A DNA stretch of 64,000 bases, from positions 1 to 64,000 of the IMG/VR virus record IMGVR_UViG_3300042545_001134; one strand, given 5' to 3'. Position 1 is the first letter of the stretch. The number at the start of each line of letters is the position of its first letter. A program made the position numbers and the translations under genes. The notes under the pieces are model-generated. The model did not search any database. It had not been told where the DNA came from and saw only the letters and a program-made list of their open reading frames with translations. Positions 40,940 to 59,724 of the stretch are shown here, piece after piece.

Positions 40940-41230
40940 TATTAATTGTGGGACAAAAGTATGTATATTTTTGAATATTCCAAAAAATTCTGAAAATTTT
41001 TTTTTCACTATAGGGGGTGTTTCCCGATTTCCCAAAATTTTCTGGAAATTTCCGGAACGGGTTTCCCCTAAAAAGTCGATTTTTTGGATTTTTTCTGGAA
41101 AAATTTCAGTCACGGCATTGACCCCCCTTTTAGACATAGGTAAATACCCCTATATAAGGGGGGATACGGGAGGGAGGGGGGTATGGTTTAAGGGGAGGGG
41201 GTAGGTATATAACCATAGGGGGTGGTGCCA
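40940..41230. other. Divergent non-coding tract rich in homopolymer runs and a G-rich strand (candidate origin or genome terminus)
   Basis: Strand switch; TTTTCTGGAAA twice; GGGG runs 41150-41225. Confidence 0.45.
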
Positions 41231-41332
41231 ATCAATAATCAACCTGTGGACCTGGGTGGTGAAAATAAATTTGATATAATCGAAATATCTTTTTATCTTC
41301 GTATTGTCTACTAACCAATAGACCCAAACATT

Positions 41333-41605
41333 ATGATAAAGTCATTTGAATTTAGTTATTGTCTTGATGAGGTAGAGTTCATTGAGGGCAATGTAAACAT
41401 CACTATTGATGAGAGTGTGGAGATTGTAAACAAGTTAATGAAGTCCGATGAGATATATGTCGGAGAAAGAACAAGGGGGAGTGTAACCTTTGATGAGAAC
41501 ATTCAACCTATCGTTTACGATGTCAACTATGAGTATTGTAGTGAAGTCGGAGAGGATTGGGATGAGGATAAGTGGGAGGTGTTAAGTGTTCAAGTTCAAC
41601 TATAA
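41333..41605 (+). CDS. Small acidic hypothetical protein
   Basis: Own promoter and terminator. Confidence 0.7.
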   Translation: MIKSFEFSYCLDEVEFIEGNVNITIDESVEIVNKLMKSDEIYVGERTRGSVTFDENIQPIVYDVNYEYCSEVGEDWDEDKWEVLSVQVQL

Positions 41606-41812
41606 CCAAAGGGGGTACGAAAGTATCCCTTTTTTTTTGACCACAGATTTACCATCGGGATTCAAATGTAATTTTGATTGGCACCGACCTTTACCTTACT
41701 ACCAATGTTTATGTTGCCAAACAAGTTTAGCGAACCAACATCTGTTCCCGACATCTTCCCCTTTGCCAAACAAATTATTTCTCCGAAGGTCAGGGTTCGG
41801 GTTCAAAAAAAA

Positions 41813-41833
41813 TGTTGATAACTATGTGGATAA
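41813..41833. promoter_or_regulatory. Tandem DnaA-box-like 9-mers
   Basis: TGTTGATAA (41813) and perfect TGTGGATAA (41825). Confidence 0.45.
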
Positions 41834-41928
41834 CTAAACGAAAAAAAATATAAAAAAAATACTTTTTTATTTGGTACTAATCAATTTTTGACTATATTTG
41901 TGTACCAAACAATTAAAAAACATCAGTT

Positions 41929-42453
41929 ATGACAAAAGAAACAATCAACATCACAAAAAACGAGTTAATCACTTTATTAAGTGAAATTGACAAACCAACT
42001 TTTACTAATGTAGTAATGGAAACAATGGTACGAATGAACAAGACCAATAACCCATACTATAACAAAGTAGTAAAAAGAAGTAAGTGTAACTATTCGTTAG
42101 GGGTAAACTACGAAAATCGTGTGAACAACAACTACGAAAAAGAGGGTATTGAAAATACCTTTGAAACTGAAAAACCAAGTGGCAAAACCCACATTTCAAA
42201 ATGTCTTTTAGTTAGTGACAAAGACAATTCAGTTCACTATGTAATGTTGGAACGATTTGACGAAATCAAACCTACAAACGAATTTATCTTTGAGGGTAAC
42301 GAAATTGACAAACAACTTTTTCAAGATTTTATGGTAAAGTACACCGAGAGTGTTAAACAAGAACAAGAGAGAAAAGTATCAGTTATCACACCGAAAATTG
42401 AGAACATCAAAGAAATCTCACTCAACGGAATGAAGTACATCATTGGGGAGTAA
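41929..42453 (+). CDS. Hypothetical protein
   Basis: ORF with TATATTTG promoter. Confidence 0.8.
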   Translation: MTKETINITKNELITLLSEIDKPTFTNVVMETMVRMNKTNNPYYNKVVKRSKCNYSLGVNYENRVNNNYEKEGIENTFETEKPSGKTHISKCLLVSDKDNSVHYVMLERFDEIKPTNEFIFEGNEIDKQLFQDFMVKYTESVKQEQERKVSVITPKIENIKEISLNGMKYIIGE

Positions 42454-42683
42454 GTTCCCCAACTATGAAAACCGAAGTCCCCACTTGAAAAAGTGGGGAT
42501 TTTTTTTGTCCGAAGAATTTTTCGGGACTCGTGGATTTTGAACTTTGTTTGGCATCGTATTACACGGGGGAGGAAGACGGATTCTGAAATTTGATTGGCA
42601 ACAATGGTATAGATAATTGTATTACATATACTACCCCTGCCAACCAATATTCCGGATGGAGACTCGTCTGAGTGAAAAATAAA

Positions 42684-42715
42684 TTTGGAGTATAAGAAAA
42701 TTTGTTTTATATTTG
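42684..42715 (+). promoter_or_regulatory. Example Bacteroidota sigma70 promoter; similar ones precede most cassettes at 41-59 kb
   Basis: TTTG-N20-TATATTTG. Confidence 0.85.
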
Positions 42716-42738
42716 TATAACCAATAAAAATAAAAGTT

Positions 42739-42954
42739 ATGAAAGTTATCAATTCTCGTATTACGGAACAACCCAAAAGTTTCTTTGACCCGATACCACA
42801 AGTATTCGTTACTATGGAGAATGGAGAAGAACAATTCCTATTTGATTATTATCCCGATGAGATTAGTTTCACACCTAATGAGTTCGTGGGATTAACACTT
42901 GATGAGTGTAGACACTTGAAGTTTATCAAAGACAAGAAGTATCTAACAAGTTAG
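42739..42954 (+). CDS. Hypothetical protein
   Basis: LFDYYPDEISF..EFVGLT. Confidence 0.75.
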   Translation: MKVINSRITEQPKSFFDPIPQVFVTMENGEEQFLFDYYPDEISFTPNEFVGLTLDECRHLKFIKDKKYLTS

Positions 42955-43245
42955 TGTATGAGTAAGTCATCATATAAAGAAAGATTCAAGAGTTTGGGGG
43001 TACTGATTTTGGTATCCCCTTTTTTGATTTATTATTATCTAAGGTTTTTCCTGACGGGGAGATGGTGAACCTTCCCCGATTTTGGTCGGCAATCGTATTA
43101 CATATGGTGTGGTGCCAATCAAATTTCCGGATGGACGGAGATGAGTGGGGTGGTCAAAATAAATTAAAAATAATTGAAAATAAATTTGGTTTATTAAAAT
43201 ATAATGATTACATTTGAATATGTTAAACACTAAAACTATATTATT

Positions 43246-43653
43246 ATGTCATTAGAATTCAATCCAAGAGCACAAGACCATAAGTTTTATGGTACAACTA
43301 TCGGTCAATTTACCGAAGAAGAAAAAGAACTATTCCAAGTTGACCTTATGATGTCAATGGGTTTTTCAATGGTACACCTCTCAAACAAAGATGATGGGGA
43401 GATGAAAGACGAACTGAACAAATTGGGAATGTTAAGGACACACCTTTGTATTCAACTTTTAGAAATCCCCGAAGTGTTATGTAAGATTATGGGGTTTGAA
43501 AAAACACACGAGATGATTGAGGAAAGTAAGTATGGGTTTTCGAGTTTCTTAAAATCCCAAGATGAGAACACGAAAGAACACATGGAAGAAATTGAGGAAT
43601 TAGTTAGTAACCTCAAACGAGATGTTATGATGAGTAACATATCGATGAACTAA
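43246..43653 (+). CDS. Hypothetical protein
   Basis: Cassette ORF. Confidence 0.75.
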   Translation: MSLEFNPRAQDHKFYGTTIGQFTEEEKELFQVDLMMSMGFSMVHLSNKDDGEMKDELNKLGMLRTHLCIQLLEIPEVLCKIMGFEKTHEMIEESKYGFSSFLKSQDENTKEHMEEIEELVSNLKRDVMMSNISMN

Positions 43654-43671
43654 AAGATGTTTGTTTCGAAA

Positions 43672-43701
43672 AGACCTCCACAGAAATGTGGGGGTTTTTT
43701 T
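43672..43701 (+). terminator. Terminator of the CAGAAATG-loop family (also ~47138, ~50073, ~53340)
   Basis: ACCTCCACAGAAATGTGGGGGTTTTTT. Confidence 0.8.
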
Positions 43702-43899
43702 ATGTCCACAGAATTTGGGTTCAGGGACCTGGTGAGAATTTGATTGGCAACGTATTACATGTAGTAGTGGTTCACTGGTGTGCCAATCAAAATGTTTCCG
43801 ACGCCACGGGGTGAGTGAAAATATGTTGAAATTATTTTTTCTTAATGTTGTGTATAATGATATGTGTTGTATATTTGGGTATAATTAAAAACAAACAAA

Positions 43900-44517
43900 A
43901 TGAAAAAGGAGAACATCGCACAAGGAGTAGTGGTCGGAACTATCGTTATTCTTTCACTTTTACTATCAAGTTGTGAAACACAACATTGGAAGTTTGATGA
44001 GGGAATGAAGTTCGGTACGAGTTTGACTATTAAGAACAACACCTATGGAGTGAATGACTTTAAGGTTGGTGAAGTTGGAACGTATGTCGTATCATCGGGT
44101 AGTATTGATTATGGTCGTAACATTGGAAGTACGTGGTATTTCAACGAGTACGAACCTTCTATTACTAACGGAACATATAGTGGTGAGTTACTTACGAAGT
44201 TGTACCAAGATAGTATCGGTACTATTACTTTCAACGAAAACGGAAGTGGAACACTCAACATTACCAATCAGGACACCCTGACGACAGCGGTGAAGTTTGT
44301 TTGGCAAGTTCTTAAAGAAACCAACAACGGAACTTACTTATCTATGGAGTTTGAGAACATACCAATTAAAACGTATGTAACCGAAGAACCTTTGTTTGTG
44401 TTTGGTTATGAAAAGGTGGGAGAGAAGTTGTGGAAGTATGAAACCACAATGGACACTTATAGTGGTAGGTGGAAATGGATAGGTAACAAGTTGTTAAATG
44501 ATGAAGGGGGTAATTAA
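43900..44517 (+). CDS. Lipoprotein
   Basis: Lipobox LLSSC. Confidence 0.75.
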   Translation: MKKENIAQGVVVGTIVILSLLLSSCETQHWKFDEGMKFGTSLTIKNNTYGVNDFKVGEVGTYVVSSGSIDYGRNIGSTWYFNEYEPSITNGTYSGELLTKLYQDSIGTITFNENGSGTLNITNQDTLTTAVKFVWQVLKETNNGTYLSMEFENIPIKTYVTEEPLFVFGYEKVGEKLWKYETTMDTYSGRWKWIGNKLLNDEGGN

Positions 44518-44724
44518 CCCCCTTTTTTTATGTCCACAGAATTTACATCCCCGGTCTTCTGGAAATTGGTTGGCAACCAATTTGTTGACACCAACAATAT
44601 GGTCTGTTGCCAATCAAAATGTTTCCGACGCTGCTGTCTGAGTTGGGTGGATAAAAATAAATGAAAATAAATTTGGTTTATAAAAGAATTTGTTTTATAT
44701 TTGTATAAACAAACACGAAAAACT

Positions 44725-45051
44725 ATGGACTTACAAGTATTAAAACCTCTTTGTCAAAGAGAGTTCGACCCAAACGAAACTTTAAAAGTTTTAAAACACA
44801 ATCCAACAATCTTTTGGACTTGGGGAGTTAGTAAAATGGCTAATGTAGAAGACAAAGGTTTACTGATGAAAGTAAACGGACACCACCACAAGGGGTATGT
44901 TTTTATTACATTGGCGTTTGATGACACCTATTCAGTACATATTATTTCCACACATGGAAATATTAAACAAACCTTTGATATGGTTTACTTTGATGTCTTA
45001 ACGGAAATCATCGACAACCGAATCGAAAGAATTAAAAATTATTCGTTTTAG
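44725..45051 (+). CDS. Hypothetical protein
   Basis: FWTWG..VNGHHHKG. Confidence 0.75.
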   Translation: MDLQVLKPLCQREFDPNETLKVLKHNPTIFWTWGVSKMANVEDKGLLMKVNGHHHKGYVFITLAFDDTYSVHIISTHGNIKQTFDMVYFDVLTEIIDNRIERIKNYSF

Positions 45052-45457
45052 TTGTCATTGGTATTTAGGAACTATTAAAGACAACTAATCGAAGGGGGTG
45101 AGAAATCATCCCCTTTTTTTGTGCTCAATTGGCACTGTATTTCAGGAACTGTACTGGTCCCGACAGGTGTGAATTTGATTGGCAGAACGGAAACCCTTGT
45201 AAATAAAGGAAGTATTACATCTGGGCGCTGCGCTGGTAAACCAGCACGTGCTGCTGTTCTGAGCTCAGTGAATTTGATTGGCACTGTATTACAGATAATA
45301 AGTAAACATTTTTGCTTACAAAACTTGCCAATCAATATTCCGGATGGAGCCACGGTTCGTATCCCCATAAAAATATTTTAAAAATAAATGTAAATAAATT
45401 TGGATATTAAAAAATATGTTGTATATTCGTATAATCAAACAATAAAAATATATAACT

Positions 45458-45751
45458 ATGATTAATGTAATTTTAGACACACGACCTAATGTGTACGGAT
45501 TCGGACACGATTGGTTCTTGAATGTAGAGACGAACTCTTGTTCAAAACAATTCAGACTTGGACAAGATGTTAAAGTTTGTTCACGACTTTTAGGAATGAC
45601 ACCTAAAGAAGTTACAACCGAAATTGGAAGTAACGACTTACGAAGAAAAACTACTCGTAAGAAACTTGGGGAGTATATTCTATACAAGATTGGTATTTGT
45701 TACGAAGAAGAAATTGAAACTTTACAACCTTGGGAACTTTCAGTTGATTAA
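45458..45751 (+). CDS. Hypothetical protein
   Basis: Cassette ORF. Confidence 0.75.
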   Translation: MINVILDTRPNVYGFGHDWFLNVETNSCSKQFRLGQDVKVCSRLLGMTPKEVTTEIGSNDLRRKTTRKKLGEYILYKIGICYEEEIETLQPWELSVD

Positions 45752-46045
45752 GACCTTTCATTTTTGTTTAACCCTCGGACTTAATTGTTCGGGGGTTTTT
45801 TTATGTCTGAAGAACTTGAGTCAGGGGCCCGGGTGAGAATTTGATTGGCAACAAATCTTGCCGAACAAGTTTCACAGTGGGCCCTGAACTGAGATGGAAA
45901 CTTCTTGATGTTGCCAATCAATATTCCGGATGGTGCATGGTGAAGTATCCTTCAGAAAAATAATTTGAAAATAAATGAAAATAAATTTGGAATATCCAAC
46001 TATTCATATTATATTTGTGTATTGTTAATCACTAATACTATTATT

Positions 46046-46249
46046 ATGTCAGAAAAACTGAAAATTCAAAGTTCAATCGTACCAACTGAAAGACCATCTT
46101 TCAACGAATGGGTACAAGAAAAAAATGTATCGGGTTTGTATCTTGAACCAACGGAGTACTATCGAGGTAATTCTACCACAATAGGAATGATGTACCTTAA
46201 AAAAGAAGAAACCCCATTATCTAAATTTATTAAATTCTTTTCAATATGA
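46046..46249 (+). CDS. Hypothetical protein
   Basis: Start MSEK at 46046; ERPSFNEW motif. Confidence 0.65.
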   Translation: MSEKLKIQSSIVPTERPSFNEWVQEKNVSGLYLEPTEYYRGNSTTIGMMYLKKEETPLSKFIKFFSI

Positions 46250-46482
46250 TGAGTAACGAATTAATCGGAAAAAGAATCAAACTTATTACAATGTTTGATG
46301 ACCCACACCCAATCGAAAGTGGAAGTATGGGAACAATTTCTCACGTCGGTGGTGATGTGATGAATGTAACTTGGGACAACGGGAGAAGTCTTGGTGTAGT
46401 AATCGGAGTAGACAAGTACGAAATACTTGAAGACACTGACCTACCACCCCACAATTTTCTTGTCTTTTCGGGAAATATCTGA
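46246..46482 (+). CDS. DUF4314-like protein
   Basis: MFDDPHPI..GTISHV..VTWDNGRSLGV. Confidence 0.75.
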   Translation: MMSNELIGKRIKLITMFDDPHPIESGSMGTISHVGGDVMNVTWDNGRSLGVVIGVDKYEILEDTDLPPHNFLVFSGNI

Positions 46483-46591
46483 GGGACAGCACACGGGTGG
46501 AATTTGATTGGCAACAAAATAAAGTTTCACCCATTGTATATCCCAAAAATTAATCGTATATTTGTACCACAATTTAAAACCCTATATAGAG

Positions 46592-46915
46592 ATGTTAATT
46601 AAACTAACGTATTACGGAACAGGTAAACCAACTTTGGTGAACCTTGAAAGTGTAGAAACAATGTACCAAGTGATAGACAAGAATAGAACTCGTTTATCTA
46701 CAAAGGTGTCATTTAAAGGTGGTAACTATATCAACGTAGAGGAAGAACTGCAGGAAATTTTAAAACACCAATCGAATCTGATGAAAGGCATCGACCAAGA
46801 TTTTGATTGGCAAAGTCCAACAATAGACGATATGTTAGAACTTGATTACAATCGTCAACAAACACATCCTAAACGTGATTGGACACGTAACGAAAGAGTT
46901 ATTAATAACTATTAA
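46592..46915 (+). CDS. Hypothetical protein
   Basis: Start MLIK at 46592. Confidence 0.7.
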   Translation: MLIKLTYYGTGKPTLVNLESVETMYQVIDKNRTRLSTKVSFKGGNYINVEEELQEILKHQSNLMKGIDQDFDWQSPTIDDMLELDYNRQQTHPKRDWTRNERVINNY

Positions 46916-47401
46916 AATAAACGACTATGATTAGTATGTTAAAAGAATTCTACACTTTGAGTAAAGAAGTGTATTACACAGATAGGAAAGAATTTTGGGA
47001 ATCCATATTAGGTATGGTACTCATAGTGGGAATGTTCTTGGTAACGTTCTACGTACTCATCCCTATCTTCACGGAAGGCCCGTCATATCTTGATTAATCA
47101 TTGTTTGGTTCATATTGATTAGTGTTTGGTTAGTAAGAAATCCCTCATCAGAAATGGTGGGGGTTTTTTCTGCTCTGAAGTTTCTTTCCCACTGCGGTCC
47201 GCATGCGGGACCAGGTCCAATTTTGGTTGGCAGTGTATGACATATAAAGGGTGTATTACACTTAGGGTTGCCAATCAAATTCAGGGATTAGCATGACGGT
47301 GAGCAACTCCTCAAGAAAAAATAAATTTAAAATAATTGAAAATAAATTTGGATTATACTTAAAACTGTTTTATCTTTGTGTAACAATTAAAAAATAATCA
47401 A

Positions 47402-48259: not shown

Positions 48260-48452
48260 TACGATAAATTTATTTTTTTCTAATCTAAAACCCCGTTGTC
48301 GTGAGATAGTCGGGGTTTTTTTATGCGCTGAAGTGTGCAGTGGAGCCGCACAGTTGCAGCTCAGAATTTGTTTGGCATAAAAAAATATAAAATAAATTTG
48401 GTATAATAAAATAATTGTTTTATCTTTGTATAATAATCAAAACACAAACACT

Positions 48453-48674: not shown

Positions 48675-48690
48675 TAACATAATAAAATAT

Positions 48691-48927: not shown

Positions 48928-48933
48928 GTTAAG

Positions 48934-48960: not shown

Positions 48961-49013
48961 ATGCCAACTGTGCACTGTACCTGCACAGGTGACAGGGGTG
49001 ATTTTGTTTGGCA

Positions 49014-49217
49014 TTACATATCATCTAAGAACCTATCACTATATTCCTTTTCATCATCTTTTATTTCTTTGTGTAACCTATACATGTAATAGATAACAAA
49101 GACAAACAACTCAACCCATATCGTATATAATATTCCTTCTACCATGTGTAATAAATATGCCAACCAAAATCGGGAGTCGGACGACAGGTGGTCATCTCCG
49201 TAAAAGATTTTGGTCAT
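49014..49217 (-). CDS. Possible small membrane protein, counter-oriented in the block
   Basis: ORF track only. Confidence 0.35.
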   Translation of the reverse strand: MTKIFYGDDHLSSDSRFWLAYLLHMVEGILYTIWVELFVFVIYYMYRLHKEIKDDEKEYSDRFLDDM

Positions 49218-49527: not shown

Positions 49528-49681
49528 ACAAAGACCCCGAGTAACATCGGGGTTTTTTAATTCCCGTGGCGGGAAGGTTCAGGGCGGAATTTGATTGGCA
49601 AAAATAAATGAAAATAAATTTGTTTTATAAAGGTATTAGTTTTATATTTGTATCGTCTACTAACCAATAGACACCAACACT

Positions 49682-50068: not shown

Positions 50069-50308
50069 AACGAAACCCTCACAGAAATGTGGGGGTTTTT
50101 TATTTACCTGAAGACTTGAGTCGGGGCCCCTGATGGAATTTGGTTGGCACACAATAGACCATTACAATATGTAATACGTTGCCAACCAATATCCGGATGG
50201 AGACTCACATCTGAGATGGTCTATCAAAAAAAAATAAAAAAAGTATAAAATAAATTTGGTTATACGAAATATTGTTTTATCTTTGTATTGTAATCAAACA
50301 AACAAATT

Positions 50309-50509: not shown

Positions 50510-50513
50510 TCGT

Positions 50514-50834: not shown

Positions 50835-50836
50835 TC

Positions 50837-51263: not shown

Positions 51264-51601
51264 TATCGTCATCAAACCCATCTGAACTTTCGTCGAAGGT
51301 ATCTGAGATGGTGAATTTAGGTTGGCAACCGGTAGGTGGTCATCAAGTAACCACAACACGAGAAGTGAATCGTTATAGTGGACAACAACACATGGATACG
51401 ATGTATCACACCGAGTACACCCAAACAATGGTAAAGGATGTATTACACATTAAAGACGAAGTTGTGAAAGTCCTTAACACGTTAAAGACCGATGCCGAGA
51501 TGGCGTTAAGTGGAGAATGGGATTGTACTACATCGGAAGGAATGGAAAGTTTCAATGACCAAATTGAACTAATAGATAAAGTACTTGACATTTTGAAATA
51601 G
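51248..51601 (+). CDS. DUF1737-like protein
   Basis: YKVVS..LSSKVSEMVNLGWQPVGG. Confidence 0.6.
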   Translation: MQYKVVSSSNPSELSSKVSEMVNLGWQPVGGHQVTTTREVNRYSGQQHMDTMYHTEYTQTMVKDVLHIKDEVVKVLNTLKTDAEMALSGEWDCTTSEGMESFNDQIELIDKVLDILK

Positions 51602-52009: not shown

Positions 52010-52756
52010 ATGATTTCAAACGGAAAAAAAGTGAACCAAGTGTTCCAAACAAAAAACTACGGAATTTTTAAGTTCCGTACCGACAACCGAGTACTTAACC
52101 CTACTCACATTAAAAAACTATCTGAAAAGATGAAGAACATTGGGTGGATTCCCGGTTCTTATGTTGTAATCAACGAGAAAGGTGAAATTATTGACGGACA
52201 ACACCGAGTAAGTGCCGCCAAAATGGTAGGAGTTCCTATCTCTTACACCATTGAAAGAAAGTCAAACTTTGACACCATTCGTAGTTTGAACCAAAACCAA
52301 AAGAATTGGTCATTCACCGATTACATTCACGGATATGTTAAAGAGGACAATGTACATTATACATTGTTAGATGAATTCCTTACCGAGTTCAAAGATTTCA
52401 AACCAACCGAGGCGTTGATGTTTTTACAAAACAATTCAAATCCCGTACATCGTGATGTATTTGAAAGTGGTTCGTGGGAATCAAAAGATGTGGAGTTAGG
52501 TAAAGATTGGGCTAAAAAGATTCAATCACTTAAACCATTCTTTGATAAAGGTTACAACAAGTCAATCTTTGTAAGGTCAATGATTAAGTTGATGTCAAGA
52601 AAACCCGAGTTTACCTTTGAGGAGTTCTTACACAAAGTTCAACTAAGACCTGGAATGATTCACCTTTGTGGTTCAGTTGAATTATACACCGAAATGATTG
52701 AGGACATCTACAACTATCGTAGACGAAACAATGAAAAACTTAATCTTCGTTTTTGA
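52010..52756 (+). CDS. ParB N-terminal-like domain protein
   Basis: HIKKL..VINEKGEIIDGQHRVSAA. Confidence 0.75.
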   Translation: MISNGKKVNQVFQTKNYGIFKFRTDNRVLNPTHIKKLSEKMKNIGWIPGSYVVINEKGEIIDGQHRVSAAKMVGVPISYTIERKSNFDTIRSLNQNQKNWSFTDYIHGYVKEDNVHYTLLDEFLTEFKDFKPTEALMFLQNNSNPVHRDVFESGSWESKDVELGKDWAKKIQSLKPFFDKGYNKSIFVRSMIKLMSRKPEFTFEEFLHKVQLRPGMIHLCGSVELYTEMIEDIYNYRRRNNEKLNLRF

Positions 52757-52940
52757 TTTAGGAACGATGAATAACGAGAGGGGGTATCTGAAAAGATATC
52801 CCTTTTTTTTGTGTCATACATTTCCTTCCCGCCGCAGGACCTGAGATGTCGGATTTTGTTTGGCAAACTTTTTTTTGATATTTTATTGTTTATTCAAATA
52901 TTCTTCTTACCTTTGCTCTTGAAATCAACTACATAGTATT

Positions 52941-53312
52941 ATGTTTCAAAAAGAAAAAAAGAACAACGCGGTCTCATTGAAGAAATCTTTAAATGAAATT
53001 CGTAAGTGTTTAAACAAAAGTATCCCTAATATTTCTGATAAAGAATTAGTAGGGGTGAAGTTTTCTCGTATTGGTGCAGAGTATCGTATAGAGAACGCTC
53101 CCATTCCACCATCTGATACAATCGGATTACAACTTGAAAAGTCATTCAACGACTTCATGAGTAATCTGAATATAAACTATGGTGGAGTTAAGATTGAAGG
53201 TTCCATGTTTTTGGGAACTAAATCGGACATGTTCATGTTGGGTTACAACAACTACGAACGAAAAGGAAAGAAAATAACCAAAAATGGTTATTCAATAGAT
53301 GGAAGTTTATAG
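52941..53312 (+). CDS. Hypothetical protein
   Basis: Cassette ORF. Confidence 0.65.
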   Translation: MFQKEKKNNAVSLKKSLNEIRKCLNKSIPNISDKELVGVKFSRIGAEYRIENAPIPPSDTIGLQLEKSFNDFMSNLNINYGGVKIEGSMFLGTKSDMFMLGYNNYERKGKKITKNGYSIDGSL

Positions 53313-53675
53313 TGTAGATTAATAATTGTTCGGTTCAGGAAACCTCGGCAGAAATGTCGGGGTTTTTTTATGCTGCAAAATCTGTAGCAACGCAGCGCGC
53401 AAACATCCAGTGATTTTGTTTGGCAGAATGTAAACCCCCGTAAATAAAGGAATTCTTATTTCTAGTTAAAACAGCACATCGCCAGTAATGGCAGCGCAAC
53501 CTGGTGCTGTTGCTGCCAGGTGATTTTGTTTGGCAGTTGCCAACCAACATTCACAGTGGGCCCCTGAAGACGACTCGAAAAAATAAATGAAAAAAAATAT
53601 AAAAATAATTTGGTTATACGAAATATTGTTTTATCTTTGTACTGTAATCAAAACATAAACAAAAAAATTAAAATT

Positions 53676-54275: not shown

Positions 54276-54391
54276 ATAAATAATCCCCCCTAACAGGGGG
54301 GAATTTGTTTGGCAAAAATAATTGAAAATAAATTTGGTTTATAAAAGTATTCGTATTATATTTGTATTACCAAACATTAAACACTAAAAAT

Positions 54392-54787
54392 ATGAAAAGT
54401 ATTAAAGTTCGTTTCAATCTCGGTAGAGGTAAAAACTATTTGAAGTGGAAGGTAACACATCCTGATGGTGATGTTATCTACTATAGTCCTGATGAAGTAC
54501 AAATGGTAATGACCGAGTGTACATTTAAGAACCACAAGAGTACCGCACAGAAAATTTTCGATGGTGCACACAAAACAGTTTGTGCGTGGATACTATGTAA
54601 GGACATTAAGATTTACACAGGTAAACCAATCACGGATGAAAGTAGAAGGGTTCGTTATAATCCACGTGTCCAACCTAACTGGATATTCGATGGTCATATC
54701 ATGGATAATGATGGGGTGCCGAAATTACACACAATTGAAAGTGGCGTTTATATCACAGAAGGAAAAGGTGAAAATTGTTTGGCATAA
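54392..54787 (+). CDS. Hypothetical protein
   Basis: KVRFNL..HKTVCAW..YNPR. Confidence 0.75.
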   Translation: MKSIKVRFNLGRGKNYLKWKVTHPDGDVIYYSPDEVQMVMTECTFKNHKSTAQKIFDGAHKTVCAWILCKDIKIYTGKPITDESRRVRYNPRVQPNWIFDGHIMDNDGVPKLHTIESGVYITEGKGENCLA

Positions 54788-54865
54788 AATAAATAAAAAA
54801 AACTTTAAAAATAATTTGGTATAATAAAATAAATGTTATACCTTTGTACCACAAACAAATTTAAT

Positions 54866-55177
54866 ATGAAAAAGACCAAAGAACTTTATCGAAGTAAACT
54901 ACACACAAGAGATAAATCTCACGATGTAGTAATCATCCAAGACATTACAAGAGTAAGTGGATGTAAATTAAAAATGACCTACGAATGTTACAACGCAGTT
55001 GAACGATTTACAGGTGAACGACTTGTAGGTGGTAAATGGGAGTTTAACTTCTCGATGTCAGATTTGGGTGTATCATCCGATAGTTCAATGTATGTGAGTA
55101 GTCAAGATAACCGACTATCACGAGCAGAGGACTTAATGAAAAGAGGAATAGAATTGTTTAACATTTTAAATCAATAA
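54866..55177 (+). CDS. Hypothetical protein
   Basis: Cassette ORF. Confidence 0.7.
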   Translation: MKKTKELYRSKLHTRDKSHDVVIIQDITRVSGCKLKMTYECYNAVERFTGERLVGGKWEFNFSMSDLGVSSDSSMYVSSQDNRLSRAEDLMKRGIELFNILNQ

Positions 55178-55181
55178 GAAA

Positions 55182-55730
55182 ATGGGATTAGATATGTATC
55201 TCTCGAAAAAGACCTATGTTAAAAATTGGTCTCATCAAACTCCTGAAGAAAAACATTCAGTTGAAGTTAAGAAAGGTGGTGTATTACGCACAGACATCAA
55301 ACCTGAAAGAATAAGTTATATTACTGAAGAAGTAATGTATTGGAGAAAGTCAAACCAAATTCACGGATGGTTCTGTAACAACACGGAAGAATTGGTGGAC
55401 AATGTAAGGTACGATGTATCGAGAGACCATCTTGAACAACTACTCTCTGATTGTAAGAAGGTTTTGGAAATCTTAAACACTTCAACTAAATCAATAACTC
55501 AAGTTGCTGGTGGTTGGAAAGATGGTAAGGAATATATGGTTGATGTCGAAGTGTATGACAATGTGGATGAGGTGATGGAAATTCTACCACCAACACAGGG
55601 GTTCTTCTTTGGTTCAGATACTATCGATGATTGGTATAAGCAGGACATCGAAAACACTATCAATGTTCTTACCGAAGAACTAACAGGTATAGAGGCGTAT
55701 TCGGATTACTCATACTACGCATCTTGGTAA
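55182..55730 (+). CDS. Conserved phage hypothetical protein (MGLDMY family)
   Basis: MGLDMYL, YWRKSNQIHGWF, GFFFGS, YYASW. Confidence 0.8.
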   Translation: MGLDMYLSKKTYVKNWSHQTPEEKHSVEVKKGGVLRTDIKPERISYITEEVMYWRKSNQIHGWFCNNTEELVDNVRYDVSRDHLEQLLSDCKKVLEILNTSTKSITQVAGGWKDGKEYMVDVEVYDNVDEVMEILPPTQGFFFGSDTIDDWYKQDIENTINVLTEELTGIEAYSDYSYYASW

Positions 55731-55808
55731 ATTAAAAATAATGGGAATACCATTAGGAATAATGGTATTCTCTTTATATCTTTGTATCACATATAAAAAA
55801 TAGAAATC

Positions 55809-56450
55809 ATGCCAAACTGGTGTAATAACTTCATAGAAATTCAAGGGGATAAGAAAACTATCCAAAAATTAAGTCGAATCATTGAGAGTTCAAAGATTCC
55901 GGGCGATGATAATCGTGGTGTGTTCTCCGCATTGATTGGGATTAAACCATCTGTTACAGCGGAAGATTATGATAAAGGTGAGTGGTATGACGCAAACACA
56001 TCTTGGTTTGGAACTAAATGGGACATCTCATATGATGAATGTAATTACACATTTGATGATGAGTCCATTTCATTTAGTTGTGAAACGGCGTGGTCGCCCC
56101 CAATTTCATTCCTTGCCACTTTATGTAAGATGTATGGGGTATCAGGTGTTATTACATATGAGGAGGGTGGTTGTGACTTTGCGGGTAAGACCACAATCAA
56201 TGAAGAAGGTGATATATTGGAGGAAGAAGATTACACATACAATGAAGGATTATATTTTCTTAATAATGAATGTTTTTGGATGGAGTTGGAAAGTAACATT
56301 GAATACCACGCAGACGAGAATACTTCACCAGATGATTTCGTTTCCAATTACGATTATGTAACGGACGAAGACAAAGTAGAAATAAAGAAACTTTACGAGG
56401 AGTATCTCGTAGATAACGATATCACAATAGAGAAAGAAGAAAATGCATAG
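55809..56450 (+). CDS. DUF1281/YubB ferredoxin-like protein
   Basis: MPNWCNN, WFGTKWD, CETAWSPP, YEEGGCDFAG. Confidence 0.8.
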   Translation: MPNWCNNFIEIQGDKKTIQKLSRIIESSKIPGDDNRGVFSALIGIKPSVTAEDYDKGEWYDANTSWFGTKWDISYDECNYTFDDESISFSCETAWSPPISFLATLCKMYGVSGVITYEEGGCDFAGKTTINEEGDILEEEDYTYNEGLYFLNNECFWMELESNIEYHADENTSPDDFVSNYDYVTDEDKVEIKKLYEEYLVDNDITIEKEENA

Positions 56451-56688
56451 TACACAACATAGGTCAGTAGTAGAACCCCCCGAGAGGGTTTCGTTTGAAG
56501 AATGGTTTGAGGAGTTTAATGTTTCACGACTCCACAGAGCAAAAAGTATGGAACAACGAGTTCTATTAGATGAAACAGCAGCGTTCGCTGAAGAATATGA
56601 GAAAAAAACAGACGGGACAGCAGCAACCGAGAATTTGCTTGGCAAACTTTTAAAATTTAAAAACAGAATACATGGGACGAGTAAATAA
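56443..56688 (+). CDS. Hypothetical protein
   Basis: ERVSFEEW motif; 3' half contains a box module. Confidence 0.5.
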   Translation: MHSTQHRSVVEPPERVSFEEWFEEFNVSRLHRAKSMEQRVLLDETAAFAEEYEKKTDGTAATENLLGKLLKFKNRIHGTSK

Positions 56689-57160
56689 GACAATTGAGGG
56701 GGTTTTCACAAACATCGTAGGTACCTCAAGTGAAATCAGTACTTACAATCAATTCATTAATCAAGGTGAGGATTTAAATATTTCTAAGGAACTACAGGAC
56801 CTCACTGACACATATGTGAAGTTAGTTAACGAAAGTAAGAACACATTCGAACAGTTGGCATCTTTGGAGGAGATTATCATGCAAATGAGAATCAAGGAGA
56901 ACTTAGATGATATCAAATTATCATTGGTTCGTGAATACATCTACGCAAGGACTCCATTCTATCGCAAGGATAAGAAGGCCAAGGATGTTAGGGTCATAGT
57001 GAACAAAGTGGAGTTTCATCCTGAGGTGGACAGTGAAGGAATCGAGATTTTGTTTGGCAATGAGGAATTCATGGCAAGAGCAAAAGAGAAGTTGGTTCAG
57101 TCAATGGACAGTGAGATAAAGGAGAACATCCGATTACTAAAACAAATGTTGAACAATTAA
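56672..57160 (+). CDS. Hypothetical coiled-coil protein
   Basis: ORF track. Confidence 0.75.
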   Translation: MGRVNKTIEGVFTNIVGTSSEISTYNQFINQGEDLNISKELQDLTDTYVKLVNESKNTFEQLASLEEIIMQMRIKENLDDIKLSLVREYIYARTPFYRKDKKAKDVRVIVNKVEFHPEVDSEGIEILFGNEEFMARAKEKLVQSMDSEIKENIRLLKQMLNN

Positions 57161-57421
57161 ATTTGGAGTCATGGACGAAAGAGCACAATTCATTAGAATC
57201 GCAATGGCAAGATTAAACTCTGTGTACATTTTTAAACCACAGAGGTTGGCGGTTGCGGCAAAGATGTACCGAAAGTACTTGGAACGGAAAGAACAGAGAA
57301 ACGACTAACCGTCCTCAGGATGGTGACAGGTGGTCGATTTTGTTTGGCAGAAAAAAATATCATAAAAGATTTGGAATATTCTAGAATTAATATTAACTTC
57401 GTACTTTAAAACCAAAATATT

Positions 57422-57739
57422 ATGTCATATAAACAACAAGTACAGGATTTACAGAATGATATTATAAAAAATATCAAACGATTCGTGGGTGAACTCGGTC
57501 AAGATGAATTACATTTTAACGAGATGTTTAGAGTTTGGGTAACGATATCAACTTGGGACGATGATTATGTTCGTGTGTCATACGCGGCAGTCGGGTTACG
57601 GGGTGAGTTTGTTATCTGCACCAGTGAGGTTGAGGAAGAAGAAATTCAATTAGGGGAACTCGACATATATGAGTTGTCATACATTTTAGATTTACTAATA
57701 TCAAATCAATTTAAAACCGATAACAATGGACAAGATTAA
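57422..57739 (+). CDS. Hypothetical protein
   Basis: Cassette ORF. Confidence 0.7.
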   Translation: MSYKQQVQDLQNDIIKNIKRFVGELGQDELHFNEMFRVWVTISTWDDDYVRVSYAAVGLRGEFVICTSEVEEEEIQLGELDIYELSYILDLLISNQFKTDNNGQD

Positions 57740-58307
57740 ATTAAACAGTAAGGTCGTTGTATCCGACCCTTGTTACACAATTCCAACTTGGTGTCAGGCC
57801 ATAGTTGATGGTGTATTACCTGGCAACTATAATGTGTTCTGTAAAAGACACGACTTAGGTGACTGGGGAGTTCGTAACTCAATGTTACTTATAGTACACG
57901 AGGACCACACAAACGACACTCTTGAGTGGGAATCACATCCCGCAACAATTGGTGTTGACTCTGGTCAGTGTGGATTCTTCTCAAGTGAATCATATCGTAA
58001 TGACTCTCACCCAATTGAAAAGGGTGGGGCTGACTTCTCTTGTTCTCGAGGTGAAGAAGGTGATGAGTTCTATGACAAGATGGGACAGAGAACTTTGACC
58101 ACAGAGTCATATGGTGTGTATGACGAGGGTGCGGTGTGTTCATCAGGTATAGGAGATGGTTCATATATGTTGTTTACGGCAGAGGATGATTTTGGTAATG
58201 TAATAGGAATGGCGGTGGACTTCTTAATTGAGGGTCCTGAAGACGAGGAGGATGATACAAACAACTTCATCGATTTCGAATTCTATAAAGAAGAACTTGT
58301 AAAATGA
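57726..58307 (+). CDS. DUF4241-like protein
   Basis: VVVSDPCY, IGVDSGQCG, SSGIGDGSY. Confidence 0.7.
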   Translation: MDKIKLNSKVVVSDPCYTIPTWCQAIVDGVLPGNYNVFCKRHDLGDWGVRNSMLLIVHEDHTNDTLEWESHPATIGVDSGQCGFFSSESYRNDSHPIEKGGADFSCSRGEEGDEFYDKMGQRTLTTESYGVYDEGAVCSSGIGDGSYMLFTAEDDFGNVIGMAVDFLIEGPEDEEDDTNNFIDFEFYKEELVK

Positions 58308-58368
58308 TAGTAATAGGAATCATCATCGTTATCGTACTTTTGTCGATACTAAAAGAAATAAAGAAGAA

Positions 58369-58635
58369 ATGAAAAAGTTATTCATAGTGATGGGATTGGC
58401 AATCGGTGGTTGCCAATCACCACAAACCTTAATCATGAAGTCGGACTTCACCGCAGTAAATCAGGACTCCACTAAGTTGTGGATTAAGGATACTGAATTT
58501 GGTAAACATCTGTACAACGCATGGAAGACAGGAGTTTATGGGGACGACACGAAAGTATACCTGTTGGACAGCACAGAATTCAACAATTTGGTTGGCACAA
58601 AATCAAAGTCCAAGAATCCGACGGTGAGTCTGTAG
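58369..58635 (+). CDS. Small lipoprotein
   Basis: Lipobox AIGGC. Confidence 0.6.
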   Translation: MKKLFIVMGLAIGGCQSPQTLIMKSDFTAVNQDSTKLWIKDTEFGKHLYNAWKTGVYGDDTKVYLLDSTEFNNLVGTKSKSKNPTVSL

Positions 58636-58682
58636 ACCCCCCGATTTTGTTTGGCAAGAAATATTAATTTAAATAAATCCAT

Positions 58683-59120
58683 ATGGAACCGAATTTAATT
58701 ATCAAACCATCCCAATGGTTAAACCTTGGGTGGTACGCATTAACAGTGGGAGGATTATACATCCATGAGTACTTGGGGTTATTCTTCTTAGTAATCCTGA
58801 TTTATAAAATCTTGGACATCTACTGTTGGAGTTACAGGTTCTACGACGATATCATTGTGGAGAAGAGAGGAATCCTGAATGTGACCCAAGAAGAGGTTCA
58901 TTACTTCAGAATCAAATCCATGATGGTGGAGGAACCATTCTTCCAACGTTTATTGGAACTGTCGACCATCAACATGTCTACATCTGAACATCTCAAACAG
59001 AACTTCGTTCTACATGGTATTTTAAAGGCAGAGGAAACTAAAGAATACCTTGCGAAGATGACCAAGACTAAGAGACGTAGTAATGGAATCCGCGAGATGG
59101 ATATCATCAACGGGTACTAA
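58683..59120 (+). CDS. Membrane protein with bacterial PH (bPH_2) domain
   Basis: TM hairpin, EKRGIL..YFRIKS..QRLLELSTI. Confidence 0.75.
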   Translation: MEPNLIIKPSQWLNLGWYALTVGGLYIHEYLGLFFLVILIYKILDIYCWSYRFYDDIIVEKRGILNVTQEEVHYFRIKSMMVEEPFFQRLLELSTINMSTSEHLKQNFVLHGILKAEETKEYLAKMTKTKRRSNGIREMDIINGY

Positions 59121-59337
59121 CCCTGATGGACCTGAAGACAGGTGACGATTTTGTTTGGCAGGGATTACCGTCCGACGGGACCTGAGATGGTCGATTTTGT
59201 TTGGCAAGGGTTAACCTTCCTCAGGACGACCCCGGAATCAGGATTTTGTTTGGCAATAGTTTTTTGAAATATTTTGTAACGGGATTTGGAAATGTCAGAT
59301 TTATTGGTTATATTTTATATATAAAACTGATAATATT

Positions 59338-59523
59338 ATGGCAAACAAAAAAATCACTCAGAGACAACCAGGTAAGGTAACTGCATACGAACCTGTGTCG
59401 CATCACATCTACCACGATGGTTATTCATATCGTGTACGTGTGATTAAGAACGGTACCCGTTACAGTCAGAATTTCTCTAGTAGAAAGAAGGCAATGGATT
59501 TCCGCAAGTCATTGTTATCTTAA
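59338..59523 (+). CDS. Small basic protein, AP2/Arm-type DNA-binding-like
   Basis: IYHDGYSYRVRVIKNGTRYSQNFSSRKKAMDFRK. Confidence 0.55.
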   Translation: MANKKITQRQPGKVTAYEPVSHHIYHDGYSYRVRVIKNGTRYSQNFSSRKKAMDFRKSLLS

Positions 59524-59724
59524 TAGGATAACTTTACGTGGGTTCTCCATTCCACAATGGGGGACCACTAGACCCGTGGTAACCCCACGGGTTTTTTTCG
59601 TTACCACAGAAACCTGACTCAGGATGGTATCCTGGATTTTGTTTGGCAAGGACACCCGTGTTGTAACATCTAACACTGTCGATTTTGTTTGGCAAGGATG
59701 TGTATGACAGAACTATTTATATGT

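What the first reader, a model, noticed from the sequence alone, without database searches (positions are those of the whole stretch)
41226..59694. About 50 copies of a polarised TTTGNTTGGCA box confined to the early-type block
Seen: by eye about 35 forward and about 15 inverted (TGCCAANCAA) copies. Almost every intergenic gap has one between the terminator and the next promoter, often as an inverted pair with 3-60 bp between. Copies also fall inside ORFs (about 44296, 46802, 54776, 56635, 57048, 58385-58410, 58587). In the first 41 kb I noticed only isolated matches (e.g. 23955). Established analogies are mycobacteriophage stoperators, parS arrays and KOPS-like polar motifs. Inference: a high-density protein-binding code that silences, compacts, protects or pulls in this DNA segment. 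I do not recognise it as a described system.
Basis: partly seen in the sequence, partly recalled or inferred. Interest (0 to 1): 0.8.

Follow-up and report, generated by a model that had tools for sequence, protein, structure and literature searches.

The report
Polar DNA box array in phage early block
A 14-base asymmetric DNA box with a GC-rich flank occurs about 48 times in one 18.5-kb block of small early-type genes of an uncultivated 310-kb freshwater phage. It is kept unchanged in distant relatives, so it is almost certainly a protein-binding signal marking the borders of each gene unit, but its binder and exact job are unknown.

Summary
TTTGNTTGGCA has 36 exact hits (0.18 expected), all in 41673-59694. 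With relaxed matching there are about 48 copies, 34 forward and 14 inverted, and the other 45 kb is at chance level.

The window is the first 64 kb of a 310,691-bp IMG/VR contig, a jumbo phage of a probable Bacteroidota host. The full box is R-A-W-T-TTG-N-TTGGCA, preceded by about 30 nt of GC-rich, non-conserved DNA.

Forward copies follow 17 of 19 forward terminators. Inverted copies lie 34-68 nt before promoter -33 boxes. Close pairs are always convergent, and their spacers are phased at about 10 bp.

In-ORF copies use three reading frames. Relatives at 42-80% protein identity keep the same box at 10-39 copies per 20 kb in the syntenic block, and almost none in structural regions.

The box is not a hairpin, not coding, not a sigma-54 or sigma-70 element, and not a host-genome repeat.

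Best reading: an operator or roadblock array for a dedicated DNA-binding protein that insulates and coordinately controls about 20 host-transcribed early units, in the manner of stoperators or KorB sites. The binder is unidentified. A ParB/KorB-like protein in the block is a weak candidate.

I class it as a new variant of a known kind. The function is inferred, not shown.

The parts
41226..59694 (+). Whole motif-bearing block: about 37 small forward-strand genes in about 20 transcription units
   Evidence: motif confinement. (intergenic anatomy). (21 of 25 forward Bacteroidota-type promoters of the window lie here). (terminators 40 against 12.7 expected).
41226..41238 (-). Leftmost copy, inverted, just upstream of the first promoter of the block
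41671..41776 (.). Module after gene 41333-41605: forward copy at 41671, inverted copies at 41715 and 41764
42542..42650 (.). Module: two forward copies 46 nt apart (42542, 42588), then inverted copy at 42638. The spacer holds GTATTACA.
43079..43125 (.). Convergent pair: degenerate forward copy (TCGGCA) at 43079 and inverted copy at 43113, spacer 21
43737..43793 (.). Convergent pair, spacer 31, between the terminator of 43246-43653 and the promoter of 43900-44517
44294..44306 (+). In-ORF copy (ORF 43900-44517; the core reads F-V-W-Q)
44563..44620 (.). Convergent pair, spacer 32
45172..45338 (.). Module: forward copies at 45172 and 45271, inverted copy at 45326 (spacer 42)
45838..45924 (.). Convergent pair, spacer 61
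46501..46513 (+). Single forward copy directly after ORF 46246-46482. Orthologous copies occur in L234, L237 and L236.
46800..46812 (+). In-ORF copy (ORF 46562-46915, frame F-D-W-Q). Absent from orthologues.
47220..47281 (.). Convergent pair, spacer 36, upstream of the DUF932 gene
48365..48377 (+). Single forward copy after the DUF932 gene terminator, 19 nt before the -33 box of the next promoter
49001..49170 (.). Wide convergent pair (spacer 144): forward copy at 49001 after a terminator, inverted copy at 49158 before a promoter
49588..49600 (+). Single forward copy, 18 nt before a -33 box
50137..50192 (.). Convergent pair, spacer 30. The accessory GTATTACA word is in flipped orientation.
51315..51327 (+). 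Degenerate in-ORF copy (TTA instead of TTG), the variant that is common in relatives L237 and L244
51746..51784 (.). Convergent pair, spacer 13, upstream of the ParB-like gene
52010..52756 (+). ParB/Noc/KorB-like two-domain protein gene. It is the only recognisable DNA-binding candidate in the block and only a weak candidate binder.
   Evidence: Against.
52853..52865 (+). Single forward copy after the ParB-like gene terminator. It is the only conserved island in the alignment of five orthologous spacers.
53413..53550 (.). Forward copy at 53413, then a 22-bp palindromic pair with a 2-nt spacer (53523 forward, 53538 inverted)
54302..54314 (+). Single forward copy placed immediately after a C6/G6 hairpin, so here the box also serves as the T-rich tail of the terminator
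54772..54784 (+). Copy overlapping the last codons and the stop of ORF 54362-54787
56632..57349 (+). Three forward copies in an operon without spacers: 56632 (in ORF 56443-56688), 57047 (in ORF 56672-57160, conserved at the same codons in L234 and L235), and 57337 (intergenic)
58585..58656 (+). Two forward copies 59 nt apart: 58585 in an ORF, 58644 intergenic
59148..59255 (+). Tandem array of three forward units with periods of 46 and 49 nt and no gene between them
59636..59694 (+). Tandem array of two forward units (period 46) after a terminator, at the right edge of the block

Best explanation
The box (R-A-W-T-TTG-N-TTGGCA plus about 30 bp of GC-rich 5' flank) is the recognition site of a dedicated sequence-specific double-stranded-DNA-binding protein. 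I expect the protein to be phage-encoded or virion-delivered.

One protomer reads one asymmetric half-site. Two protomers on a convergent pair touch each other across a helically phased spacer.

The sites bracket each of the roughly 20 host-RNA-polymerase-transcribed units of the block. A forward copy sits about 40 nt behind the terminator and an inverted copy about 60-65 nt ahead of the promoter. Extra forward copies lie inside ORFs where there is no spacer, and arrays lie at the block's right edge.

I infer that the bound protein acts as an orientation-dependent boundary or roadblock and as a co-ordinate regulator. It would stop read-through between units and out of the block, and most likely shut the whole early block off once the protein accumulates. 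The GC-rich flank roughly matches the footprint of a polymerase halted in front of the site.

Shown: non-randomness, polarity, confinement, anatomy, DNA-level purifying selection and family-wide conservation. Inferred: protein binding, the identity of the binder, and the regulatory outcome.
For: Enrichment and confinement: 36 exact copies against 0.18 expected, all in the block. Fifty of 60 relaxed matches are in the block and the rest are at chance. Convergent pairs occur only in the block across the whole 310-kb contig.

Anatomy: 17 of 19 forward terminators are followed by a forward copy, and the gap from T-run to box is 32-54 nt. Inverted copies end 34-68 nt before -33 boxes, mostly 61-68 nt. 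Single forward copies end 18-19 nt before -33 boxes.

Pairs: among close pairs, 35 are convergent and none is divergent below 62 bp. Spacers cluster at 2, 13, 22, 33, 42 and 61 nt, with Rayleigh R about 0.5 at a period of 10-10.5 bp and p about 2e-4.

Sharp information boundary: 10 invariant core positions sit next to an unconserved flank that is 50-56% GC against a 33% background.

Alternatives excluded: the flank is not a consistent hairpin (mean z -0.5) and no frame is open.

Selection: in-ORF copies are all forward and use three frames. Copy 57047 keeps TTG-TTT-GGC in three lineages while neighbouring codons vary. Relatives at 42-80% identity keep the same core at 10-39 copies per 20 kb, and about 74% of copies are co-oriented with the genes. 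Their structural regions have 0-2 copies per 20 kb. An alignment of orthologous spacers shows the box as the only island after the terminator.

Host transcription of the units: Bacteroidota -33/-7 promoters score 21 of 25 forward hits in the block against 3.9 expected.

Precedent: L5-type stoperators are asymmetric 13-mers, more than 20 per genome, intergenic and orientation-dependent (PMC9283540). KorB long-range silencing from multiple sites is described in PMC11790492.
Against: No binding protein is identified.

The only recognisable DNA-binding candidate in the block is the ParB-like protein. It has a 36%-identical full-length homologue in Flavobacterium phage lillamy9-1, whose genome has one copy of the box and no array.

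Sites lie between a terminator and the next promoter, where little transcription is expected, so a roadblock there looks partly redundant.

About 29% of copies are inverted although all genes run forward.

The helical-phasing statistic counts paralogous and orthologous modules that are not independent.

Metatranscriptome contigs cover the block but give no usable transcript ends.

The timing of expression ('early') is not shown.
Confidence: 0.45

Rival explanations
1. The boxes are loading or nucleation sites of a ParB-family NTP-dependent clamp. The in-block ParB/KorB/Noc-like protein would load there and coat, condense, position or protect this 18-kb DNA segment. Any silencing or counter-silencing of promoters would be a secondary effect, as with KorB or VirB.
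For: The protein at 52010-52756 matches PHROG 'ParB-like partition protein' (2e-27). Its AlphaFold model (pLDDT 84) aligns over about 240 columns with ParB-CDP, Noc, KorB and pNOB8 ParB-N at probability 1.0. An orthologue sits inside the motif block in every relative examined. Some pairs form a 22-bp palindrome with a 2-nt spacer. Sites every 400-600 bp would give uniform coverage. KorB and VirB precedents: PMC11790492 and PMC10770331. DndB-like ParB folds act as repressors (PMC12704722).
Against: Most sites are single asymmetric half-sites, not palindromes. The box II motif reads GQHRVS instead of GERRxR, so CTP-clamp chemistry is doubtful. TM-scores are low (0.3-0.4). Flavobacterium phage lillamy9-1 carries a homologue without any array. 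The co-occurrence in relatives is built into the search, because loci were fetched through this gene.
Confidence: 0.17
2. The boxes are ends or recombination sites of gene cassettes. Each unit (inverted copy, promoter, gene, terminator, forward copy) would be bounded by TG...CA inverted termini and exchanged by a site-specific recombinase or transposase. The array would be the footprint of cassette shuffling, in the manner of integron attC sites or T4 PeSL cassettes.
For: Every unit in the left two-thirds of the block is bracketed by an inverted copy on its left and a forward copy on its right. Gene order is shuffled between relatives, and strain variants show alternative cassette junctions. 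The only-convergent rule for close pairs follows automatically from this model. Two-nt-spaced pairs resemble serine-recombinase crossover sites, which I state from background knowledge.
Against: No target-site duplications flank the units (by inspection). No recombinase or DDE transposase was found in the window. The only transposon-type gene is a TnpB at 61900-63327, of a family that lacks terminal inverted repeats. In-ORF copies and one-ended units (the right third of the block) are unexplained. The strain junctions seen fall in the conserved promoter and terminator sequences, not at the box. The core is invariant across 42%-identity relatives while the rest of the unit is scrambled, which argues for function rather than recent spread.
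Confidence: 0.13
3. The box is a transcription signal read by a polymerase rather than by a separate regulator. It could be a promoter or terminator for a phage-encoded RNA polymerase or sigma-like factor (a middle-class signal doubling each host promoter), or a factor-dependent termination or pause element acting on read-through RNA.
For: The box is polar and sits upstream of nearly every gene. Forward copies lie at a fairly fixed distance after terminators. At 54302 the box directly follows a GC hairpin and supplies its T-rich tail. In three places its TTTG lies 21-22 nt upstream of a TAnnTTTG word, so it could serve as a -33 box.
Against: Convergent pairs 2-60 bp apart make no sense as promoters. 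No polymerase or sigma gene is seen in the 64 kb, although 250 kb remain unread. No downstream element lies at a fixed distance. The sigma-54 spacing is off by one, and sigma-70-type sites are not enriched (75 found against 72 expected). Hairpins are not general. Helical phasing of pair spacers points to duplex-DNA recognition. No Rfam family matches in the block.
Confidence: 0.1
4. The box is a polar signal for a DNA-tracking machine: a Chi-like attenuator of a host exonuclease, a KOPS-like guide for a translocase, a nicking site, or a DNA-entry signal. It would be concentrated on the segment that enters the cell first.
For: There is a strong strand bias, 34 to 14 in the window (p 0.006) and about 140 to 50 in relatives. 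The gene content resembles plasmid leading regions and anti-restriction sets: DUF932, DUF4314, DUF1281_C and a ParB-like fold. A ParB/Srx nuclease-type fold could nick DNA, which I state from background knowledge.
Against: At about 14 bp the box is long for Chi or KOPS, which are 5-8 nt. Inverted copies are systematic partners, not noise. Copies are tied to terminators and promoters rather than evenly spread. The genome ends and the entry order are unknown. No read-level data on nicks were available.
Confidence: 0.08
5. The box is a selfish or neutral repeat (MITE-, REP- or BIME-like) that spread in AT-rich spacers and has no function for the phage.
For: It is intergenic, lies after terminators, often forms inverted pairs, and has GC-rich surroundings, like REP/BIME elements (background knowledge). 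Units can be tandemly amplified.
Against: There is no palindromic hairpin and no target duplications. The core is invariant while flanks are randomised at orthologous positions across relatives down to 42% identity. In-ORF copies are conserved at synonymous sites. Strict confinement to one block is repeated in many genomes.
Confidence: 0.04

Closest known systems
Stoperators and operators of Cluster A mycobacteriophages (L5 gp71-type repressor)
   Same: Both are asymmetric 13-14 bp sites with tens of copies. Both lie mostly in short intergenic spaces, some at gene ends or inside genes, and their orientation is correlated with transcription. They are read by one protomer (PMC9283540).
   Different: Here the sites are confined to one 18.5-kb block rather than spread genome-wide. 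About 29% are inverted partners in helically phased convergent pairs. Each site carries a GC-rich, non-conserved 30-bp flank. They sit after intrinsic terminators. The phage is a 310-kb, probably lytic, phage of Bacteroidota. No gp71-like repressor was found.
KorB-OB sites of plasmid RK2 (also VirB-virS, Noc-NBS): ParB-family regulators with many dispersed sites
   Same: Multiple sites lie in intergenic DNA at variable distances upstream of promoters. A ParB-fold protein with a helical DNA-binding domain is encoded within the regulated region.
   Different: OB, parS and NBS sites are palindromes of 13-16 bp. Here most sites are single half-sites. The GERRxR nucleotide-binding motif is not conserved. 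A homologue occurs in a phage that lacks the array.
P1 C1 repressor operators (from background knowledge, not checked here)
   Same: An asymmetric 17-bp operator is present in many copies, either single or as inverted bivalent pairs, and controls many dispersed operons.
   Different: P1 operators overlap promoters and serve lysogenic immunity. Here the sites lie between terminator and promoter, have GC-rich flanks and are block-confined.
PeSL (promoter-early stem-loop) regulatory cassettes of T4-type phages (from background knowledge)
   Same: Small accessory early genes are each flanked by a near-identical host-type promoter and a stem-loop terminator, in a plastic region where gene order is shuffled between relatives.
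   Different: PeSL consists of the promoter and stem-loop only. The box described here is an additional, separately conserved element with polarity and pairing rules.

Membership tests
Stoperator system (Cluster A mycobacteriophage type) | Asymmetric 13-14 bp site in more than 20 copies | tested here: met
   The core is non-palindromic with 14-15 informative positions, and the window holds about 48 copies.
Stoperator system (Cluster A mycobacteriophage type) | Orientation strictly correlated with the direction of transcription | tested here: inconclusive
   71% of window copies (34 to 14) and about 74% in relatives (140 to 50) are co-oriented with the genes. The inverted copies are systematic partners of forward copies.
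Stoperator system (Cluster A mycobacteriophage type) | Sites distributed over the whole genome | tested here: not met
   Sites are confined to one block in the window, in the whole contig for pairs, and in relatives.
Stoperator system (Cluster A mycobacteriophage type) | Monomeric two-domain HTH immunity repressor encoded by the phage | tested here: inconclusive
   Pfam and PHROG scans of the block ORFs and of the 31 largest ORFs of the rest of the window found no such protein. About 250 kb of the genome was not read.
ParB-parS / KorB-OB type system | Palindromic 13-16 bp site | tested here: not met
   Only 6 of 35 close pairs form a contiguous palindrome (spacer 1-2 nt). Most sites are single half-sites.
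ParB-parS / KorB-OB type system | ParB-fold protein with a DNA-binding helical domain encoded nearby | tested here: met
   PHROG 12305 matches at 2e-27. Foldseek hits ParB, Noc and KorB at probability 1.0 over about 240 columns, though TM-scores are only 0.3-0.4.
ParB-parS / KorB-OB type system | Conserved CTP-binding GERRxR motif | tested here: not met
   The corresponding stretch reads DGQHRVSAA, which is invariant G63, H65 and R66 in the family alignment.
ParB-parS / KorB-OB type system | Protein and site array co-occur | tested here: inconclusive
   All relatives with at least 42% identity have the array, but they were fetched through this gene. Flavobacterium phage lillamy9-1 has a 36%-identical homologue and no array.
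Integron attC / site-specific recombination cassette | Integrase or recombinase adjacent, and promoterless cassettes | tested here: not met
   No recombinase was found in the window. Every unit has its own promoter and terminator.
MITE / REP-BIME repeats | Palindromic hairpin body or terminal repeats with target-site duplication | tested here: not met
   The flank is not a hairpin (mean z -0.5). Inspection of unit flanks shows no duplications.
Chi / KOPS polar motifs | Short 5-8 nt motif, skewed genome-wide with replication or entry polarity | tested here: not met
   The box is about 14 bp and block-confined, with paired inverted copies.
Sigma-54 promoter | GG-N10-GC spacing (TGGCAC-N5-TTGCW) | tested here: not met
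   TGGCA is present. The only recurrent downstream word (GTATTACA, in about 8% of units) is one base out of register and has A in place of G.
Intrinsic terminator | GC-rich hairpin immediately followed by a T-run | tested here: not met
   This is true for a few copies (54302, 53523, 59636) but not in general. Canonical terminators lie 32-54 nt upstream of the box.

The most novel reading that the evidence does not exclude
The box, its GC-rich 'landing pad' and its convergent phased pairs would constitute a previously undescribed kind of bacterial-virus boundary element. In this reading a protein-marked, orientation-dependent insulator is placed at both ends of every early transcription unit. 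It would be functionally akin to eukaryotic terminator-protein sites. It would let a jumbo phage run about 20 independent host-transcribed mini-operons and then silence or seal the whole segment at once. The binder might be an atypical ParB-fold protein that loads at half-sites.
Probability: 0.2. Interest if true: 0.8.

Novelty: new variant of a known kind. Interest (0 to 1): 0.6.

Why it matters
If the box is a boundary or shut-off operator, it gives a sequence handle on temporal gene control in a large, abundant and wholly uncultivated group of freshwater jumbo phages of Bacteroidota. More than 700 homologues of the block's ParB-like protein occur in metagenomes, on contigs up to 335 kb.

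It would add a second, independent example of stoperator-like polar silencing outside mycobacteriophages, with features not described there: GC-rich flanks, phased convergent pairs and confinement to one block.

It also marks the hypervariable accessory-gene block, which is probably anti-defence or host take-over. The box can therefore be used to find such blocks and their cargo in metagenomes.

Tried and rejected
- **Hairpin plus tail** (terminator, N4-type promoter or REP): folding the 32-nt flank of all 46 copies gave mean z -0.5, and only 7 copies fell below -1.5.
- **Coding repeat or C-terminal tag:** no frame is open through the units, and in-ORF copies use three frames.
- **Sigma-54 or sigma-70 element:** the spacing is wrong, no partner lies at a fixed distance, and sigma-70-type sites are not enriched.
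- **Known RNA family:** none in the block at Rfam gathering thresholds.
- **Host-genome motif:** the pair scan of 185,579 species genomes gave scattered single hits. The one dense locus (L291, 31 copies in 8 kb) is a short contig of a Bacteroidota MAG, most likely a binned phage relative.
- **Close cultured relative:** none by megablast. The proteins are only distantly similar to those of other jumbo phages.
- **Literature:** searching for the motif strings found only unrelated primers.
- **Metatranscriptome contigs:** the three RNA runs cover the block, but contig ends are uninformative and DNA carry-over cannot be excluded.
- **Other candidate binders:** Pfam and PHROG scans of all block ORFs found no HTH or other DNA-binding domain apart from the ParB-like protein. 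An Atlas search of the conserved 221-aa protein was uninformative.
- **Co-variation of the ParB-like protein with the box:** not testable, because all close relatives share the same core. The distant homologue loci (L251, lillamy9-1) have no array.

Full report
**Source and setting**

The window is the first 64 kb of IMGVR_UViG_3300042545_001134. Fetched loci carry identical motif spacing and contig coordinates equal to window coordinates. The contig is 310,691 bp and comes from lake-water metagenomes. It has no close relative among 50,697 deposited phage genomes. Its large proteins show only weak similarity to those of other jumbo phages.

The window carries four tRNAs and a tmRNA. The host is probably a member of Bacteroidota, on three lines of evidence:
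- The pattern TTTG-N18-22-TAnnTTYG is the -33/-7 promoter consensus known for Bacteroides and Flavobacterium (background knowledge). It occurs 25 times on the forward strand, 21 of them in the block, against 3.9 expected on both strands together.
- Sigma-70-type sites are not enriched (75 found, 72 expected).
- The ParB-like protein has its best cultured homologues in Flavobacterium phages, and a motif-dense relative contig is binned in a Bacteroidota MAG.

**Check of the observation**

| Pattern | Matches | Expected by chance | Location |
|---|---|---|---|
| TTTGNTTGGCA, exact | 36 | 0.18 | all in 41673-59694 |
| TTGNTTGGCA, exact | 47 | not computed | 46 in block (32 forward, 14 inverted), 1 at 23955 |
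| ATTTTGNTTGGCA, up to 2 mismatches | 60 | 12 | 50 in block; 10 outside, equal to chance |

One item, 58385-58410, is a different small palindrome that lacks the TTGN part.

**Anatomy of the box**

The information profile of the 46 copies shows a sharply bounded core, R-A-W-T-TTG-N-TTGGCA, followed by a weak A. Ten positions are invariant.

Positions -31 to -4 are GC-rich: 50-78% per column, against 35% for the window. They are not conserved in sequence. The flank is enriched in words such as TCAGG, CCTGA and ACCTG. It is not a consistent hairpin (mean z -0.5 against shuffles), and no reading frame is open through it.

Flank plus box make a unit of about 46-49 nt. This equals the period of the tandem arrays at 59148-59255, 59636-59694 and 42542/42588.

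An accessory word, GTATTACA, follows the box by 1-3 nt in about 8% of units, in this phage and in relatives.

**Anatomy of the block**

About 37 small forward-strand ORFs form roughly 20 units. Nearly every unit has a near-identical host-type promoter and a canonical intrinsic terminator.
- By inspection, 17 of 19 forward terminators are followed by a forward copy.
- Where a strict T-run could be scored, the gap from T-run to box is 32-54 nt, with a mode of 38-45 nt.
- Inverted copies always lie to the right of a forward copy. They end 34-68 nt before the -33 box of the next promoter, mostly 61-68 nt.
- Single forward copies end 18-19 nt before a -33 box.
- Six or seven copies lie inside ORFs. 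All are forward, and they use three different frames. Chance would give well under one.

**Pairing rule**

I pooled non-identical modules from the window and eight relatives. There are 35 convergent close pairs and no divergent pair closer than 62 bp.

Convergent spacers cluster at 2, 13, 21-25, 30-37, 41-42 and 61 nt. A Rayleigh test gives R about 0.5 at a period of 10-10.5 bp, with p about 2e-4 against uniform spacers. The modules are partly paralogous or orthologous, so this p-value is optimistic. Even so, the pattern is what two proteins on the same face of duplex DNA would produce, and what an RNA or single-strand hairpin would not.

**Conservation**

Searching IMG/VR with the ParB-like protein of the block returned 18 further loci, from contigs up to 334 kb. 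All loci with 42-80% identity carry the same core at 10-39 copies per about 20 kb, mostly co-oriented with the genes. A 32%-identity locus has none.

Gene order within the block is shuffled among relatives, yet forward copies follow the same orthologous genes. I aligned the spacer after the ParB-like gene from five lineages. The terminator stem varies with compensatory changes, the flank is scrambled, and the box stands out as the only conserved island. One lineage has a TTA-for-TTG variant.

The in-ORF copy at 57047 sits at the same codons (I-L-F-G-N) in three lineages, with TTG-TTT-GGC fixed while neighbouring codons differ synonymously. A fourth lineage has lost it. This is suggestive rather than conclusive evidence of synonymous constraint.

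**Controls for confinement**

Loci around a structural gene in 19 relatives, about 400 kb in all, have 0-2 copies each. These include the very contigs whose blocks carry 20 copies.

A complete scan of IMG/VR for convergent pairs, not limited by rows, found them in the source contig only between 40958 and 55952. Single copies beyond 64 kb of the source contig remain uncounted.

**Candidate binder**

The block encodes DUF932, DUF4314, DUF1281_C, an L5 gp82-like protein and a bacterial PH-domain protein. This set is reminiscent of plasmid leading regions and phage early accessory regions (background knowledge).

It also encodes a 248-aa protein at 52010-52756 that matches the PHROG 'ParB-like partition protein'. 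Its AlphaFold model (pLDDT 84) aligns with ParB-CDP, Noc, KorB and pNOB8 ParB-N over about 240 columns at probability 1.0, though TM-scores are only 0.3-0.4. Its box II reads GQHRVS rather than GERRxR.

It is the only recognisable DNA-binding candidate in the 64 kb. However, Flavobacterium phage lillamy9-1 has a full-length 36%-identical homologue and only one box in 38 kb, with no other repeated motif. The link between this protein and the box is therefore weak.

**Interpretation**

The data establish a DNA-level, sequence-specific, orientation-sensitive signal under purifying selection, tied to the ends of transcription units.

The best-supported mechanism is a multi-copy operator or roadblock array for a dedicated DNA-binding protein. 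It would insulate the units and allow the block to be controlled as one. It works like L5-type stoperators (PMC9283540) or KorB-type multi-site silencing (PMC11790492). It is not a member of either family, because defining features fail: genome-wide spread for stoperators, and palindromy and the CTP motif for KorB.

The idea that the GC-rich flank is the resting place of a polymerase stalled at the site is my inference only.

The rivals are kept open with lower weights, for the reasons given in their entries:
- ParB-type loading or condensation
- Cassette recombination sites
- A polymerase signal
- A polar tracking, nuclease or nicking signal
- A selfish repeat

**Limits**

- No protein-DNA binding, transcript-end or timing data exist for this phage.
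- The metatranscriptome evidence shows only that block sequence is present in RNA libraries.
- 'Early' rests on promoter type and gene content alone.
- About 250 kb of the genome was not read.

Noticed in passing
window 149-605 and 6451-6857: The phage carries four tRNA genes (Met, Gly, Gln, Ser) and a full-length tmRNA (Rfam 89.6 bits) with the predicted tag GNVYNNMEVAGLLATSKVAA.
   Followed up: partly
window 61900-63327 (-), with repeats at 61373-61394 and 61667-61688: A TnpB-like gene (OrfB_IS605 plus Cas12f1-like TNB domains) lies just right of the block. Two copies of a 22-nt direct repeat, 294 nt apart, lie downstream of it on its strand. These may be element-end or guide-RNA-related sequence.
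   Followed up: no
window 40932-41332: The 400-bp divergent region at the left edge of the block holds long G-tracts (from 41158) and repeated TTTCC/GGAAA words (from 41020). It could be a regulatory region or an origin.
   Followed up: no
window 41825-41833 and 51900-51908 (also 39583): Perfect DnaA-box nonamers (TGTGGATAA) lie in two AT-rich spacers of the block. The first has a near-copy 12 nt upstream. A variant-strain RNA contig shows another such box.
   Followed up: no
window 42557, 42619, 43095, 43752, 45212, 45286, 47253, 50170 (flipped); L235 (21 copies): A second recurrent word, (A)CGTATTACA, lies in the spacers. It is preferentially 1-3 nt after the TTGGCA end of a box and is very frequent in relative L235. 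It could be a second binding site or the core of the pair module.
   Followed up: partly
window 43156-43704, 44653-44708, 45169 (joints in runs X1 and X18): Contigs from related strains, DNA and RNA, join different units at the conserved promoter and terminator sequences. Gene order also differs between relatives. The block is modular and is shuffled by recombination between its near-identical regulatory sequences.
   Followed up: partly
window 58396-58416: A short palindrome, TTGGCAA-N7-TTGCCAA, lies inside the lipoprotein-type signal sequence (L-A-I-G-G-C) of ORF 58369-58635. It resembles the box ends but lacks the TTGN part and may be a coincidence of coding.
   Followed up: no
window 13589-15988 (-): A 799-aa protein combines a GlcNAc-type glycosyltransferase (PF11397) with galactosyltransferase family 7 domains. 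These families are mostly eukaryotic or giant-virus, so this is unusual cargo for a phage.
   Followed up: no
L291 (JBAXQU010000088.1, Bacteroidota MAG ELA565, 13-kb contig): This contig has 31 copies of the box in 8 kb, so a relative of this phage has been binned into a bacterial MAG. It gives a possible host clue, or it is bin contamination.
   Followed up: partly
L237, L244 and window 51315: Some relatives use a variant core, TTAGTTTGGCA, at about 9 further sites per 20 kb. My TTG-based counts for those relatives are therefore underestimates.
   Followed up: partly
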